IMG/VR virus record: IMGVR_UViG_3300040801_001224 | Coordinates: 124,001 to 188,000 of that record | Direction: 5' to 3' (one strand) | DNA length: 64,000 nt | Part shown: positions 70 to 23,197 of the stretch, piece after piece | Numbering within the stretch: position 1 is the first letter of the stretch | How the letters are laid out: each line of letters begins with the position of its first letter | The notes under the pieces: model-generated | What the model saw: only the letters and a program-made list of their open reading frames with translations | Databases searched by the model: none | What the model was told of the DNA's origin: nothing | Position numbers and translations under genes: made by a program

Positions 70-457
70 AAGAAATAAGGCGTTCGGATAAGGGCTGGTA
101 TCCCGGAGAACTCACTGGCTGAAGAAGCTATAGACCTCCTTAAGTGCCATTGCGTAAAGCATAAATCAGTTCGCCGTTTTAATTCGATGAAGTAATTTAA
201 TGATACTGTGGACGCCAGTTCGAATCTGGCCATCTCCACCAAATCTATGGGGATGAATTAGGTTTCGACAGGGTATACTGAGAATTATGGAGAATCAGTC
301 AATGCTAAAGGCTGTGAGGATTGGGAGTAACACCTTTAATGGTGCTCGGTCGAAGAAGCAAAAAAATAATTGAAAATGATGAAATTTTCGCATTAGCGGC
401 ATAGACCGTTAACGGGGTTTTACACCGTCTTCCTTGTTATCAAAAGACGGTGTCTTT
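70..457 (+). ncRNA. ssrA: Circularly permuted (two-piece) tmRNA; the 5' boundary is uncertain and the well-supported core is about 192-457
   Basis: T-arm GCCAG-TTCGAAT-CTGGC, then CATCTCC-A-CCA ending at 241; 7-nt spacer; GGGGATG at 249 pairs with CATCTCC, giving the G3:U alanine identity pair; D-loop AATTAGGTTTCGAC; tag ORF; terminal hairpin 422-453. Confidence 0.92.
372..404 (+). other. tmRNA proteolysis tag reading frame (A)ENDEIFALAA*
   Basis: AAATAATT context, then GAA AAT GAT GAA ATT TTC GCA TTA GCG GCA TAG; resembles ANDENYALAA. Confidence 0.9.
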
Positions 458-1096
458 ATGTATGCTATAGTGTTGGCGTAACCCGTTCACTGACTTTTCT
501 TCTCCGCAAATAATACAAGAACATTTTATTCTGCTACTATTATTTTTAGAAATTTTTTCTCTGGTAGTTTTGGATAATTTTCTTCCCTTCCCTTGCCCAG
601 TGCGATCTATGTTTCTTATCTTCGGGTCATGCATTGGGTTGTTGTTTTTTAATCGTTCCGAAGCTTGCCGGCGTTGTTCGTTAGTCCATTCGTACCCTCC
701 ACCACCTGGTCTAGATACTCCTTTATTTGACTCAGATATTTTTCTTTTGTGTTCTTCAGAAAAAGATCGTCCAGTATTGGCCTGACTTATTGTTTTTTTG
801 TGTTCGTCAGATATTACCCTCGGTCCACCATCTGTTCCGTTTTCTATAGCAAGATTTGCCCATTCTTTTGATTCTACGATTTGGTTTAGCTTTGAAAAAA
901 GTGTAGAAAATCTTTTTAGCTTTTCTAAGCTTTTGAATTCCTTATACCACAAGGTATCGATAAATTTGCCGTGTTTCTTGATGTGACGTAACCAGTATTT
1001 GCCCGATCCGGCATATTTAGTCGGCTCATTTTTTGTCTTGCCGAAATATTTGAGCCCGGTTTTCTGGTGCTGTTTTATATATAGATAAATACTCAT
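440..1096 (-). CDS. Free-standing GIY-YIG homing endonuclease with NUMOD3 repeats
   Basis: IYLYIKQH...LKYFGKT...YAGSGKYW; repeated SEEHKRKISES; AGGAG RBS places the start at 1096 rather than 1138. Confidence 0.85.
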   Translation of the reverse strand: MSIYLYIKQHQKTGLKYFGKTKNEPTKYAGSGKYWLRHIKKHGKFIDTLWYKEFKSLEKLKRFSTLFSKLNQIVESKEWANLAIENGTDGGPRVISDEHKKTISQANTGRSFSEEHKRKISESNKGVSRPGGGGYEWTNEQRRQASERLKNNNPMHDPKIRNIDRTGQGKGRKLSKTTREKISKNNSSRIKCSCIICGEEKSVNGLRQHYSIHKDTVF

Positions 1097-1164
1097 GCTG
1101 ATACTCCTATTCAGTATTAGAGTAGTCGGATACGCCAATATCGCGGACTACATTTTTATTTATC
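1097..1164 (-). promoter_or_regulatory. Late promoter plus two-hairpin leader of the endonuclease gene
   Basis: GATAAATA on - strand at 1157-1164; stems GTAGTC/GACTAC and CTAATACT/AGTATCAG, the second overlapping the AGGAG RBS. Confidence 0.6.
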
Positions 1165-1171
1165 ATTTTAC

Positions 1172-1200
1172 TTGACATTTAACGATTTCATTGCTATAAT
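1172..1200 (+). promoter_or_regulatory. sigma70 promoter (leaderless start at 1207)
   Basis: TTGACA-17-TATAAT. Confidence 0.85.
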
Positions 1201-1206
1201 AGATCT

Positions 1207-1470
1207 ATGACTGATAAAATTTTTTATATGACCGAAATAGAGCCCCATGGATGGATAGTTACTTCTACAAAAGATGACCTCTTAGAAATAGACTACGAAA
1301 TGTCTAAAGATGGCAGAGGCTTTAGTAACACCCCAGCAGTTGAAGTTCGTCGTAGACCAGGGCATAGCATACCGGATAAATACAAACGGGCATTCTTTGA
1401 ATTAGATATTCTTTATTCTAGGTTTATTTATATTGCAGAAAACTGTGTTCCGTGGTTGGAAAAAGTTTAA
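1207..1470 (+). CDS. Hypothetical protein
   Basis: 87-aa ORF 6 nt after a consensus -10 box. Confidence 0.7.
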   Translation: MTDKIFYMTEIEPHGWIVTSTKDDLLEIDYEMSKDGRGFSNTPAVEVRRRPGHSIPDKYKRAFFELDILYSRFIYIAENCVPWLEKV

Positions 1471-1521
1471 CATGCTTTAGCGGGGTTTCAAGGGCACCTG
1501 GCAACAGAAGCCCTTTCTTTT
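1471..1521 (+). repeat. Second, displaced copy of a tmRNA coding-piece 3' tail
   Basis: CGGGGTTT + stem AAGGGC/GCCCTT with loop ACCTGGCAACAGAA parallels CGGGGTTT + stem with loop CCTTGTTATCAA at 413-453. Confidence 0.6.
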
Positions 1522-1555: not shown

Positions 1556-1581
1556 AATAGGGCGTTACGCCCTATTTTTTT
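1556..1581 (+). terminator. Rho-independent terminator-like hairpin
   Basis: AATAGGGCG-TTA-CGCCCTATT followed by a T run. Confidence 0.6.
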
Positions 1582-21073: not shown

Positions 21074-23197
21074 ATGATCAAACATTCAAAACTAGCCACA
21101 TCAGTATACCAGATCCTAAAGGGTCACGGTTCATTGCCTACTATGTTTACACGGGAAGGTCAAGAAACAGTTGACCCAGCTGAAGCACAGTATATGTGGG
21201 TAAATGATCCAAACATTATGATTGCTATAGATCCAATGGATGGTACAATCCGTTTTGAAAAGAGTGACACATTGCCACTAGAAAAAATTGATAAGCTACG
21301 TAAGCAGTTACGCAAATTAGCAAACGACAACGCCCTAAATTTCCAATTCAAAATTATTGGTGGTGAGATTACTCCAAAGGATTATTCTGCAGAAACTAAA
21401 AGACAGGAAAAAACAATGGAAAGTATTATATTAGAAGGTTTTTCAAAACTAAGAGGTTCAACTAAAACTAGCTATCAGATGTTAGAAAACGCACGTCTAG
21501 TTATTAAACACCGCCTACCGGTAAACGAAGAAATTCGTGGCGCACGTAGCCGTAACATTCAGGCGATATTTATTGAGAGCAATGGCGAACGCTTCCGCTT
21601 CCCAGTAAATAACCTAGCAGGTGCTCGAGCGGCACTACGCCACGTTGTAGAAGGCGGTAAGATTGATGATCAGATTGGCAACTATATTGTTGAGTCTACA
21701 AAGAAGTTAATTAAGATGCGTGAGTTTGTTCGTTACGCACGTACCAACAAGCTTATCAACGAGGATACAGCAGAAGCAGTTGACCTAGTTAAAGAAAATA
21801 TCCAAGTAATAGCTTCCGAAATCCACAAGATCACAGGTAAGAAAACTTACGAGTCGATTAAAACACGTATTGAAGAATCAAACAATGAAGTACTAGAAGA
21901 GAACGATATTGATGAACTGAAAGACATGTTCACTATTAAGCGTTTTGACGAGAAGTTCCTAGACCTACTTCCCGATGTTAAGCAGATGGTCAGCGAACGC
22001 CAATCATTCCTACGTAGAATTGAAGAAGCGTCAGAGCAAGAAATCAAATTAGACGAAACCAAATATGTTTCGGATACAATTATTGAGCATACCACACGTG
22101 AAGGTGAATTGAGTTCACGTTTACAGATGGTAGCGGCATCAATAATGGAAAATGAAGAACTAGCTAGTTATGTTAGCTCACTAGCAGGCAAGCTAGTAGA
22201 AGGCGAGCTAAATGCTTTTGAAAGTTCTGTGCTAGGTAATGTCCTACGTAATGCGAAAATCCAAGAAAGCGTGGATGCTGATCTATTAGACTTTGCTAGG
22301 CAGTACTGCCAGATGTCAGGTATTGACATTCACTTACCCGGTGTTACCGAAGAAGAGCGCATCAAGTGTGCCCAGGAATTCATCGACCGCACAGGCGTTA
22401 GCTCAGCAGATGAGCTAGAAGCGTACATTGAAGGCCAGGAATCATATGTTGCGGCTATGATGCAGGACATATTCCAGTCAGCAGGCGATGACAGAATGTT
22501 TGGCGAAGCTGTCCAAGATATGGAACACTTTGATCTAGGCCAAATGAAAGATCGTATCCGTTCAATGTCAGACGAAGAACTATCAGGTTGGATCGGCCAT
22601 CAGCCACCGGAAGACGCAGTAGGCGGCCGTTACTTCATGAAAATTGTTGGTCACGAACTTAAGAAGCGTGGCTTAGACGAAGGCTACACAGTATTACCTC
22701 AAATGTCAGACGAAGACCAAGCACGTTACCAAGAGCGTGATGGTTTAGAAGGTCCATTTAGAGCAAGAAGCGGTAAAGTTTACTACTATGACCCAAGTGA
22801 AGGCAAGTACTATGATCCAGATACAGACTTTTACATCAGTGATGAAGAGTTCATGAAGCATGATCAATATGGTTTAACACAAGAAGGCTTCGGTGACTTC
22901 GTTAAAGGAATGGCCCGAAAAGGTGTTAACGCACTAGACAGAAAAGCAGTTGACCAAATATTCAAAGCAATTGATATGACAGGTTCATGGTTAATGGTAG
23001 CAAGTGAAATTTCAGATCTAGATGAAAAGAAGAAAGCTAACATGCTACGCTCAATGCGTGACTTCTGTGAACACAACCCAGACGATATGCGTTGTGACAC
23101 GTTGAAGAAAATGATACAGTTCATAGAACCAGAAATGAAAGAAGCGCAACAGTTAGAAGAGTCATTAAATAAATTTGACCCAAAGTTTCTTTTTTAA
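21074..23197 (+). CDS. Large head-internal/core protein with appended modules, including an OCRE-like YYYDP repeat
   Basis: RSRNIQAIFIESNGERFRFP..LAGARA..RHV core; VYYYDPSEGKYYDPDTDFY; late promoter at 21048. Confidence 0.7.
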   Translation: MIKHSKLATSVYQILKGHGSLPTMFTREGQETVDPAEAQYMWVNDPNIMIAIDPMDGTIRFEKSDTLPLEKIDKLRKQLRKLANDNALNFQFKIIGGEITPKDYSAETKRQEKTMESIILEGFSKLRGSTKTSYQMLENARLVIKHRLPVNEEIRGARSRNIQAIFIESNGERFRFPVNNLAGARAALRHVVEGGKIDDQIGNYIVESTKKLIKMREFVRYARTNKLINEDTAEAVDLVKENIQVIASEIHKITGKKTYESIKTRIEESNNEVLEENDIDELKDMFTIKRFDEKFLDLLPDVKQMVSERQSFLRRIEEASEQEIKLDETKYVSDTIIEHTTREGELSSRLQMVAASIMENEELASYVSSLAGKLVEGELNAFESSVLGNVLRNAKIQESVDADLLDFARQYCQMSGIDIHLPGVTEEERIKCAQEFIDRTGVSSADELEAYIEGQESYVAAMMQDIFQSAGDDRMFGEAVQDMEHFDLGQMKDRIRSMSDEELSGWIGHQPPEDAVGGRYFMKIVGHELKKRGLDEGYTVLPQMSDEDQARYQERDGLEGPFRARSGKVYYYDPSEGKYYDPDTDFYISDEEFMKHDQYGLTQEGFGDFVKGMARKGVNALDRKAVDQIFKAIDMTGSWLMVASEISDLDEKKKANMLRSMRDFCEHNPDDMRCDTLKKMIQFIEPEMKEAQQLEESLNKFDPKFLF

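What the first reader, a model, noticed from the sequence alone, without database searches (positions are those of the whole stretch)
402..1521. Homing-endonuclease cassette appears to have replaced the tmRNA 3' tail, leaving the old tail 1 kb downstream
Seen: the layout stop codon, short stem, CGGGGTTT, long stem with a CCT-containing loop, T run occurs twice: after the tag (402-457, loop CCTTGTTATCAA) and after the stop of ORF 1207-1470 (1468-1521, loop ACCTGGCAACAGAA). The second loop matches my recollection of alphaproteobacterial two-piece tmRNA ends. Between the copies lie a GIY-YIG/NUMOD3 nuclease and a divergent ORF, and the nuclease's last codons are the antisense of the tmRNA terminal stem. 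Inference: intronless homing into an RNA gene with tail replacement, so the new tail would resist cleavage.
Basis: partly seen in the sequence, partly recalled or inferred. Interest (0 to 1): 0.62.

Follow-up and report, generated by a model that had tools for sequence, protein, structure and literature searches.

The report
Phage tmRNA, homing nuclease, spare tail
A 328-kb phage carries a complete two-piece tmRNA gene, then a mobile homing-nuclease cassette, then a second, orphan copy of the tmRNA's 3' pseudoknot 1 kb downstream; this looks like a recombination scar at a nuclease-marked RNA gene, but no relatives exist to prove how it arose.

Summary
Window 140-458 is a permuted (two-piece) tmRNA gene with tag ENDEIFALAA and its own 3' pseudoknot, PK2a (413-453). 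A second, intact PK2-type module, PK2b (1481-1515, U-run to 1521), follows the stop of ORF 1207-1470. PK2b is the best match in the window, and the only hit at E <= 1 in the whole 328-kb genome, to a model built from 71 other phage tmRNA tails. It also matches the 3' end of Rfam alpha_tmRNA.

Between the two copies lies a minus-strand nuclease (440-1096) with a GIY-YIG fold, NUMOD3 motifs and a zinc finger. Its stop codon sits in the PK2a loop. It has a conserved leader shared with three other homing-endonuclease genes (HEGs) in this genome. An outward consensus promoter is placed to start transcription at the ATG of an 87-codon ORF with no relatives (ORF87).

No nuclease-free relative exists in any collection searched, so "tag joins old tail" could not be tested. 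The narrow version, a new tail grafted at the stop codon, gets no support. A homing event that co-converted the donor's tmRNA 3' part and ended illegitimately is the best fit (about 0.45). Rivals are a relic of a second tmRNA gene, or a PK2-like terminator belonging to ORF87. The closest precedents are T4 SegB and the mORF-mediated 3'-end replacements in fungal mitochondria.

The parts
140..458 (+). Permuted (two-piece) tmRNA gene. Acceptor piece ends in CCA at 239-241. A 7-nt intervening segment occupies 242-248. The coding piece starts at GGGG 249-252. The tag frame 372-404 encodes ENDEIFALAA, with stop TAG at 402-404.
   Evidence: ARAGORN. Rfam tmRNA_permuted 181-404, 95.6 bits; beta_tmRNA 140-458, 66.3 bits. 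The body alone (140-404) is still best matched by beta_tmRNA, 55.5 bits.
413..453 (+). PK2a, the 3' pseudoknot attached to the tmRNA. G-run 414-417 pairs with CCUU 432-435. Stem 422-431/444-453. Loop CCTTGTTATCAA.
   Evidence: Sequence; inverted repeat I15; beta_tmRNA tail alignment. The same loop occurs in tmRNA tails in 24 viral-contig loci; a 25th pattern hit, L351, is a chance match. Pseudoknot covariation across 71 tails.
440..1096 (-). Free-standing homing endonuclease gene, 218 aa. Domains: N-terminal GIY-YIG fold, NUMOD3 repeats, C-terminal C2H2-like zinc finger ending at His213 (458-460). The last five codons and the stop (440-457) read into the PK2a 3' arm and loop.
   Evidence: Pfam NUMOD3, E 2.5e-6. 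PHROG 314 homing endonuclease. AF2 model, pLDDT 78. Best PDB match I-TevI catalytic domain, Z 6.6, followed by other GIY-YIG proteins. At least 167 relatives in viral contigs, with homology ending near residue 209-211. Codon use is atypical for this genome.
1097..1166 (-). Conserved HEG leader, read on the minus strand: late-promoter-like TGATAAATA (1157-1165), hairpin (1122-1127/1146-1151), CUCU anti-SD (1119-1122), SD GGAG (1104-1107), then ATG. On the + strand the hairpin followed by a T-rich run looks like a terminator for tmRNA read-through.
   Evidence: Four copies in the genome, each directly upstream of a minus-strand HEG from one of three nuclease families. A homologous leader, with compensatory stem changes, precedes the L191 HEG.
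1172..1200 (+). Outward-facing consensus sigma-70 promoter (TTGACA, 17 nt, TATAAT). The predicted +1 is about 1207, the A of the ORF87 ATG.
   Evidence: 12 of 12 match. A homologous promoter follows the c305 HEG cassette.
1207..1470 (+). ORF87, an 87-codon ORF with no relatives. It has no Shine-Dalgarno sequence and is probably leaderless. Function unknown.
   Evidence: No relative except itself among 5.8 billion proteins. No Pfam or PHROG hit. ESM model pLDDT 0.38. In-frame codon score 0.147, above the 95th percentile of off-frame windows.
1481..1521 (+). PK2b, an orphan tmRNA-type 3' pseudoknot of the alpha-like subtype. G-run 1482-1485. Stem 1490-1495/1510-1515. Loop ACCTGGCAACAGAA. U-run 1514-1521. 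Homology to tmRNA tails starts at about 1475-1477, just after the ORF87 stop.
   Evidence: Rfam alpha_tmRNA 3' end, E 5e-9. R1 21.3 bits, E 1.2e-5; unique in the genome at E <= 1. Extended tag-plus-tail HMM. The same loop core occurs at the ends of many alpha-type tmRNAs.
1556..1581 (+). Canonical intrinsic terminator (9-bp GC-rich stem plus T run) closing the unit before ORF150.
   Evidence: Terminator scan; inverted repeat I19.

Best explanation
The locus is a mosaic made by homing-endonuclease-associated recombination at a phage-borne two-piece tmRNA gene.

Shown:
- The tmRNA (140-458) is complete and uses PK2a as its 3' pseudoknot.
- A Seg-like GIY-YIG/NUMOD3/zinc-finger HEG cassette sits convergently against it. 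The cassette comprises the HEG ORF, a conserved late-type leader and an outward promoter.
- The promoter is placed to start transcription at the ATG of ORF87.
- The ORF87 stop is followed at once by PK2b, an intact PK2 of another tmRNA lineage, and then by a canonical terminator.

Inferred:
- In a mixed infection the nuclease cut an HEG-less phage in or near its tmRNA gene.
- The left end was repaired by homologous copying of the donor's tmRNA 3' part, at least tag plus PK2a, and possibly the whole beta-like gene.
- Copying ran on through the HEG, the promoter and ORF87.
- For lack of homology on the right, the event was resolved illegitimately at the stop/PK2 boundary of the recipient.
- The recipient's own PK2b and terminator were thereby stranded 1 kb downstream, where they now serve as the 3' end of the ORF87 transcript.

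This step may have happened in this genome or in the cassette's previous host.
For: - Two rare features coincide at one locus. Among the other viral-contig permuted-tmRNA loci fetched (L083-L201), none has a second tail, and only one lineage has a relative of this HEG within its fetched locus.
- That lineage's HEG (34% identity) carries a homologous leader and directly abuts another permuted tmRNA. This suggests the family resides at tmRNA genes.
- PK2b is not decayed. It has a consensus loop, stem and G-run, and is the best hit in the genome. It is followed by a terminator, as many phage tmRNA genes are.
- PK2a and PK2b differ throughout the stem and at 5 of 12 loop positions. They are therefore different alleles, not a recent duplication.
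- HEG codon use is foreign (-0.03, against 0.32 +/- 0.15 for resident genes), and the ORF is intact. The arrival was probably recent.
- The cassette promoter is placed so that the predicted +1 is the A of the ORF87 ATG. ORF87 therefore travels with the promoter, and the right edge of the block lies at PK2b.
- Homology of PK2b to tmRNA tails begins right after the ORF87 stop.
- There is a precedent for the architecture (new 3' end, then endonuclease, then native 3' end about 1 kb downstream) in fungal mitochondrial genes (PMC3630166). T4 SegB homes next to tRNA genes and recognises the T-psi-C motif (PMC2330249).
Against: - No HEG-free relative or donor was found, so no junction is demonstrated.
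- The 80 closest HEG relatives are not next to tmRNAs.
- The other three HEG cassettes in this genome are clean insertions without target duplication.
- ORF87 has moderately native codon use.
- An orphan PK2-like tail follows a protein gene in a phage record with no permuted tmRNA match and no sign of an HEG. Such tails can therefore exist without this mechanism.
- Phages with two different tmRNA genes exist (L138).
- Neither the tree of tmRNA bodies nor the helix-5 test tells which tail is native.
Confidence: 0.45

Rival explanations
1. The HEG is a simple intergenic insertion just downstream of a resident, intact tmRNA, as at the other HEG sites in this genome. PK2b is an older relic of a second, alpha-type tmRNA gene. 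The body of that gene was deleted or overwritten (now ORF87), independently of this nuclease.
For: - The HEG/hairpin junction (stop codon in the loop of the upstream gene's terminal hairpin) recurs at two ordinary terminators in the genome.
- Those cassettes are clean insertions.
- Body and PK2a are both beta-like.
- A phage contig with two different permuted tmRNAs, one of each loop subtype, exists (L138).
Against: - No trace of a tmRNA body or tag remains upstream of PK2b.
- A functionless relic should have decayed, yet PK2b is a near-consensus match.
- This account needs coincidence of two rare features at one locus.
- The precise leaderless fit of ORF87 to the cassette promoter is left unexplained.
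Confidence: 0.25
2. PK2b is a functional PK2-like terminator or 3'-end stabiliser that belongs to the ORF87 transcription unit (promoter, leaderless ORF, pseudoknot with U-run). It was co-opted from tmRNA at some earlier time. Its closeness to the tmRNA is incidental, or reflects the cassette's history at tmRNA loci.
For: - L319/L322 carry a perfect PK2-like hairpin plus T run 4 nt after the stop of a 412-aa DUF2828/DUF7788 gene.
- The corresponding 106.8-kb record (89% complete) gave no permuted tmRNA match.
- PK2b has its own U-run and is intact.
- ORF87 scores as coding.
Against: - Such orphans are very rare: none in about 1.5 Mb of other phage loci and only one in this genome, 1 kb from the tmRNA.
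- A second, canonical terminator follows 35 nt later, so PK2b is not needed for termination.
- No function of PK2 outside tmRNA is known.
Confidence: 0.2
3. The second copy is a chance resemblance: an ordinary terminator hairpin that happens to look like a tmRNA tail.
For: The element is short, at about 40 nt. The Rfam score is below the family gathering threshold, because only the tail of the model is matched.
Against: - E 5e-9 against Rfam alpha_tmRNA.
- E 1e-5 against an independent phage-tail model, and a unique hit in 328 kb.
- All three signature parts are present: G-run, stem and a 14-nt consensus loop.
- No hit in 1.5 Mb of control phage DNA.
Confidence: 0.03

Closest known systems
Phage T4 SegB, a free-standing GIY-YIG homing endonuclease in the tRNA gene cluster (PMC2330249)
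   Same: Both are free-standing (intron-less) GIY-YIG HEGs in a T4-like phage, lying beside genes for small structured RNAs with a T-psi-C arm. Homing of SegB carries flanking RNA genes along (co-conversion).
   Different: Here the neighbour is a permuted tmRNA. The HEG is convergent and overlaps the RNA's terminal hairpin. A spare copy of the RNA's 3' module lies downstream. Cleavage and homing have not been tested here. Sequence similarity to Seg proteins was not measured.
mORF-mediated 3'-end replacement in fungal mitochondrial genes: Allomyces atp6; Glomus atp6, atp9, cox2, nad3 (PMC3630166)
   Same: The order of parts is the same: gene body, then a foreign 3' end, then an endonuclease ORF, then the native 3' end displaced about 1 kb downstream. 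The two 3' ends are strongly diverged from each other.
   Different: Those cases are protein-coding genes in mitochondria, with the endonuclease ORF usually in frame and on the same strand, and with close relatives that prove which end is native. Here the gene encodes an RNA in a phage, the HEG is on the opposite strand, an extra ORF lies between, and no relative is available.
[quoted passage not shown]
   Same: This is the only previously catalogued link between homing endonucleases and tmRNA genes.
   Different: Those are intron-borne LAGLIDADG enzymes inside standard one-piece tmRNA genes. Here there is no intron, the enzyme is GIY-YIG type, and it lies outside a permuted gene.
Two-piece tmRNA of alpha- and beta-proteobacteria and of phages (Rfam RF01849, RF01850, RF04321; PMC3985003)
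   Same: The gene is permuted. The coding piece has PK1, the tag and PK2. The PK2 loops match the beta-type (copy 1) and alpha-type (copy 2) consensus.
   Different: The resume codon is GAA rather than GCA. The intervening segment is very short (7 nt). The beta_tmRNA score is below that family's gathering score. A second PK2 is detached from any tmRNA body.

Membership tests
Permuted (two-piece) tmRNA | tRNA-like domain in permuted order: acceptor 3' strand with CCA lies upstream of the 5' strand; T arm present | tested here: met
   Rfam RF04321 full-length match at 181-404, 95.6 bits against a gathering score of 47. ARAGORN also calls a permuted tmRNA.
Permuted (two-piece) tmRNA | Tag reading frame ending in a hydrophobic ALAA-type degron followed by a stop | tested here: met
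   ENDEIFALAA followed by a stop, 372-404. It aligns to the beta-type ANDE.FA.AA consensus.
Permuted (two-piece) tmRNA | PK2 directly 3' of the tag | tested here: met
   PK2a at 413-453. The pseudoknot helix covaries across 71 phage tails: the central pair is GC 57, AU 5, CG 4, GU 2, UG 1, with 2 unpaired.
Permuted (two-piece) tmRNA | Expression, processing into two pieces, alanylation, tagging activity | not testable with these tools
   Only DNA contigs were available and no RNA run holds the locus.
tmRNA PK2 module (for the orphan copy 1481-1515) | G-run, stem, and a CCU...AACAGAA loop able to pair with the G-run | tested here: met
   R1 21.3 bits, E 1.2e-5. Rfam alpha_tmRNA tail, E 5e-9. 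GGGU 1483-1486 can pair with ACCU 1497-1500.
tmRNA PK2 module (for the orphan copy 1481-1515) | Attached to a tmRNA coding piece (tag immediately upstream) | tested here: not met
   The upstream sequence is ORF87. No tag or tmRNA-body homology was found.
GIY-YIG homing endonuclease (Seg-like, free-standing) | GIY-YIG catalytic domain | tested here: inconclusive
   No Pfam GIY-YIG hit even at E <= 10, and a profile search against PDB was blank. The AF2 N-domain best matches the I-TevI catalytic domain (Z 6.6, rmsd 3.2 A, 83 residues), and eight of the next nine rows are GIY-YIG proteins. Z below 8 is only moderate. The motif reading (YLY...YFG...R.H...E...N) rests on my own knowledge.
GIY-YIG homing endonuclease (Seg-like, free-standing) | Modular DNA-binding region (NUMOD repeats, zinc finger) | tested here: met
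   NUMOD3 with 3 stretches, E 2.5e-6. A weak C2H2-type pattern at 193-213. PHROG 314 homing endonuclease.
GIY-YIG homing endonuclease (Seg-like, free-standing) | Sporadic distribution or mobility: present in some genomes at a site and absent in relatives | tested here: inconclusive
   The family is scattered over at least 167 viral contigs at varied sites. Codon use is foreign. The leader module is shared between unrelated HEGs. No HEG-less allele of this site was found.
GIY-YIG homing endonuclease (Seg-like, free-standing) | Site-specific cleavage of the HEG-less allele and preferential inheritance | not testable with these tools
   This needs purified protein and phage crosses.
HEG-mediated 3'-end replacement (mORF type) | The downstream copy is the native one: closest to the HEG-free relatives | not testable with these tools
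   No relatives were found. The tree of tmRNA bodies cannot assign the tail type, which changes at least 9 times.
HEG-mediated 3'-end replacement (mORF type) | The two copies are strongly diverged (foreign versus native) and flank the endonuclease | tested here: met
   The stems are unrelated and the loops match at 7 of 12 positions. One copy is beta-like and the other alpha-like. Both flank the HEG, but ORF87 also lies between them.

The most novel reading that the evidence does not exclude
A family of free-standing GIY-YIG endonucleases homes into phage-borne two-piece tmRNA genes and spreads by swapping the gene's 3' part (tag plus PK2) for its own linked allele, stranding the victim's PK2. 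This would be the first intron-less homing into a tmRNA gene, and the RNA-gene counterpart of the mitochondrial mORF 3'-end replacements. It implies that phage tmRNA alleles are shuffled by nuclease drive.
Probability: 0.4. Interest if true: 0.65.

Novelty: new variant of a known kind. Interest (0 to 1): 0.48.

Why it matters
Phage-encoded tmRNAs are poorly understood. A 2025 census lists 79 unique phage sequences, yet one pattern scan here returned 119 viral-contig loci, 104 of which ARAGORN called as carrying a tmRNA.

If a homing nuclease drives exchange of tmRNA modules between co-infecting phages, three things follow. It would explain why PK2 loop subtypes are scattered over the phage tmRNA tree. 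It would add an RNA gene to the list of genes remodelled by 3'-end replacement. And it would give a tractable system, nuclease plus two PK2 alleles, for asking what PK2 does in two-piece tmRNA.

The shared leader on HEGs of three nuclease families is a separate lead on how a jumbo phage controls its selfish genes.

Tried and rejected
Searches for relatives that led nowhere:
- ORF150 and ORF87 have no relatives other than themselves among 5.8 billion proteins or in viral contigs.
- The other contigs encoding ORF150 are near-identical fragments of the same phage.
- Loci related through the cytidylyltransferase gene carry no tmRNA.
- A lineage-specific tmRNA pattern found only distant genes in viral and metagenome contigs.
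- Reads: three runs from one microbial-mat sample, available as contigs only at 3-4x depth, show no cassette-free joint.

Tests of which tail is native:
- Tree of 80 tmRNA bodies. The window groups with L114 (AACAGAA loop) and L170 (TTAnCAA loop), and the loop type changes at least 9 times. Uninformative.
- Helix-5 compatibility of the present tag with each post-stop segment: -6.8 against -7.0 kcal/mol. About 30% of random tag/tail pairings do as well. Inconclusive.
- Search for a donor carrying a near-identical tail 1 next to an HEG: none.

Other checks:
- Remnants of a tmRNA body or tag, or of an HEG, inside ORF87: none.
- ORF87 function: blank in Pfam, PHROGs and the ESM atlas.
- RNAalifold gave no consensus pairs on the MAFFT tail alignment, so model R1 scores sequence only. 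The stem register differs by one column between rows, which lowers the paired percentage.
- Profile search of the HEG against PDB sequences: blank.
- One search failed because I gave wrong coordinates. Sharkady and Williams 2004 is not held in the library.

Rejected: chance resemblance of copy 2, and a recent tandem duplication of the tail, because the copies are too different.
Full report
**Setting**

The window is bases 124001-188000 of a 328,096-bp virus record with direct terminal repeats. GC content is about 40% and nearly all genes lie on the + strand. The only nucleotide matches to known phages are to cytidylyltransferase genes of marine pelagiphage and cyanomyoviruses. Runs holding the sequence come from one microbial-mat metagenome.

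**The tmRNA**

ARAGORN calls a permuted tmRNA at 149-495 with tag ENDEIFALAA. Rfam tmRNA_permuted matches 181-404 at 95.6 bits. Beta_tmRNA matches 140-458 at 66.3 bits, and that match includes the hairpin after the tag. The body alone (140-404) is still best matched by the beta model, at 55.5 bits.

Two-piece tmRNA coding pieces carry PK1, the tag and PK2 (PMC3985003).

A pattern scan returned 119 viral-contig loci, 104 of which ARAGORN called as carrying a tmRNA. Nearly all have the same module after the stop codon: a G-run, a stem, a loop reading CCUnGnAACAGAA or CCUUGUUAnCCAA, and the closing stem. On 71 distinct tails, the G-run pairs with the CCU of the loop. The central pair is GC 57, AU 5, CG 4, GU 2, UG 1, with 2 unpaired.

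**The two copies**

- Copy 1 (PK2a, 413-453) follows the tag stop.
- Copy 2 (PK2b, 1481-1515, with a U-run to 1521) follows the stop of ORF 1207-1470.

Evidence that PK2b is real:
- It matches the 3' end of Rfam alpha_tmRNA (E 5e-9).
- Model R1, built from the 71 foreign tails, ranks PK2b first in the window (21.3 bits, E 1.2e-5).
- PK2b is the only R1 hit at E <= 1 in the whole genome.

PK2a scores lower with R1 (8.8 bits) because R1 is dominated by the other loop subtype. Its loop does recur in tmRNA tails in 24 viral-contig loci.

About 1.5 Mb of other phage loci contain no such element. None of the other phage tmRNA loci has a second tail. The copies share only CGGGGTTT and 7 of 12 loop positions, so they are different alleles rather than a fresh duplication. 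A canonical terminator follows at 1556-1581.

**The nuclease**

The minus-strand ORF 440-1096 (218 aa) has NUMOD3 repeats and matches PHROG 314, annotated as homing endonuclease. Pfam does not detect a GIY-YIG domain.

An AlphaFold model built on 30 homologues has mean pLDDT 78. Its best structural match is the I-TevI catalytic domain (Z 6.6, rmsd 3.2 A over 83 residues). Eight of the next nine rows are other GIY-YIG proteins.

The C-terminal C2H2-like zinc finger ends at His213 (458-460). The last five codons (KDTVF, 443-457) and the stop (440-442) are antisense to the PK2a 3' arm and loop. Homology to relatives stops near residue 209-211.

**A shared cassette architecture**

The 70 nt upstream of the HEG start (1097-1166) occur four times in the genome. 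Each copy lies directly upstream of a minus-strand HEG:
- this GIY-YIG-like gene;
- two HNH+NUMOD3 genes;
- a DUF7487/PD-(D/E)XK-like gene.

Read on the minus strand, the element is TGATAAATA (resembling a T4 late promoter, by my own knowledge), a hairpin, CUCUAA (complementary to the SD), GGAG, and then ATG. In the window and at the genome-305.8-kb copy it is followed on the + strand by a homologous consensus promoter.

At two of the other three HEGs the stop codon also lies in the loop of the terminator hairpin of the upstream + strand gene. So the junction at PK2a is the usual way HEGs are packed in this genome. Those other cassettes are clean insertions with no duplicated target.

The conserved cassette here spans about 459-1200. 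HEG codon use is foreign (-0.03, against 0.32 +/- 0.15 for resident genes).

**ORF87**

ORF87 has no relatives. It has no family match, and no confident fold. Its in-frame codon score of 0.147 lies above the 95th percentile of off-frame windows, so it is probably coding.

It has no Shine-Dalgarno sequence. The TATAAT box ends at 1200, which places the expected start at about 1207, the A of its ATG. This is a leaderless arrangement that ties ORF87 to the cassette promoter. Homology of PK2b to tmRNA tails starts right after its stop. No tmRNA body, tag or HEG remnant lies inside ORF87.

**A link between this HEG family and tmRNA**

The 80 nearest relatives of the nuclease are not near a tmRNA or tail.

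Among the viral tmRNA loci, one lineage (L112, L113, L117, L191; tag ANDNGNLALAA) has a 34%-identical homologue immediately upstream of its permuted tmRNA. That homologue has a recognisably homologous leader, with compensatory changes in the hairpin. No other HEG of this genome has relatives beside tmRNAs.

**Which tail is native?**

This could not be decided.
- No HEG-free relative or donor was found.
- On a tree of 80 tmRNA bodies the window groups with one gene of each loop subtype, and the subtype changes at least 9 times.
- The present tag end can form helix 5 with either post-stop segment (-6.8 and -7.0 kcal/mol). About 30% of random pairings do as well.

Two facts favour rival accounts:
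- Contig L138 carries two different permuted tmRNAs.
- L319/L322 carry a perfect PK2-like hairpin plus T run right after a 412-aa DUF2828/DUF7788 gene, and the corresponding 106.8-kb record gave no permuted tmRNA match.

**Interpretation**

It gets no specific support: body, tag and PK2a are concordant.

A broader version fits best. Homing from a donor co-converted the tmRNA 3' part along with the HEG, the promoter and ORF87. The event ended illegitimately, stranding the recipient's PK2b and terminator. Five points support this:
- The HEG and the orphan PK2 are each rare, yet they occur together at one locus.
- PK2b is undecayed.
- The HEG looks recently arrived.
- The block's right edge lies exactly at PK2b.
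- A related HEG resides at another tmRNA gene.

Known precedents are T4 SegB, which homes beside tRNA genes and recognises the T-psi-C motif (PMC2330249), and the mitochondrial mORF elements that insert a foreign 3' end and leave the native one about 1 kb downstream (PMC3630166). The only catalogued HEG-tmRNA link is intron-borne LAGLIDADG genes in the T loop (PMC11915505).

I put this account at about 0.45. The alternatives are a relic of a second tmRNA gene (0.25), a co-opted PK2-like terminator of ORF87 (0.2), and chance (0.03). The claim that the new tail resists cleavage is untested.

**Verdict**

This is a real and unusual locus, and a new variant of known kinds (free-standing HEG beside an RNA gene; 3'-end duplication around an HEG). 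It is moderately interesting. The mechanism is unproven because no relatives are available.

No alternative genetic code was used. Read laying was given 2,400 letters.

Noticed in passing
L082:7543-9072 (genome 119543-121072), about 3 kb upstream of the tmRNA: The phage encodes a 271-aa flagellin (Pfam Flagellin_N and Flagellin_C), a FlaG-family protein and a third 116-aa ORF in a row. Flagellar filament genes in a jumbo phage are unusual.
   Followed up: partly
window 1097-1166; L289:1764-1845; L290:1372-1445; L291:1247-1320; L191:2155-2240: An HEG leader of about 70 nt is shared by four HEGs of three nuclease families in this genome and by a related HEG in another phage. It comprises a TATAAATA-like box, a hairpin with compensatory changes, a CUCU anti-SD, GGAG and ATG. 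This suggests a portable expression-control module for selfish genes.
   Followed up: partly
L289:768-790, L291:536-556 and window 432-443: In three of the four HEGs the stop codon lies inside the loop of the terminal hairpin of the convergent upstream gene, so the last codons are antisense to the hairpin's 3' arm.
   Followed up: yes
L322:1246-1300 and L319:400-460: An orphan PK2-like pseudoknot plus T run lies 4 nt after the stop of a DUF2828/DUF7788 gene. The corresponding 106.8-kb phage record (89% complete) gave no permuted tmRNA match.
   Followed up: partly
L138:579-877 and L138:6532-6902: One viral contig carries two different permuted tmRNA genes (tags ANDEVYDLAIAA and ANDDIYSLAA), one of each PK2 loop subtype.
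   Followed up: no
window 372-374: The resume codon is GAA (Glu) where the family consensus has GCA (Ala), giving the tag ENDEIFALAA.
   Followed up: no
L330:4153-4512 and L352:7487-7844: Standard (one-piece) phage tmRNAs carry the same PK2 loop (CCTTGTTATCAAA) as the window's PK2a.
   Followed up: no
L101, L118, L128, L129, L131, L146, L162 (about 5 nt after the tail): In several phage tmRNA loci the PK2 hairpin is followed at once by a near-consensus TTGAC...TATAAT promoter rather than by a terminator.
   Followed up: no
L082:11445-12078 (window -555 to 78): Three adjacent small ORFs (95, 58 and 63 aa) just upstream of the tmRNA share a C-terminal EESSL(T/S)EE(F/Y)..YK motif. They are apparently tandem paralogues.
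   Followed up: no
window 21779-21813: A weak hit to the tail model R1 (11.3 bits, E 0.019), with no G-run and no obvious stem. Probably chance.
   Followed up: no
L308:5040-5110: A sub-threshold Rfam YrlA (Y RNA-like) match lies about 1.1 kb from an alpha-type tmRNA and near a tRNA in a viral contig.
   Followed up: no
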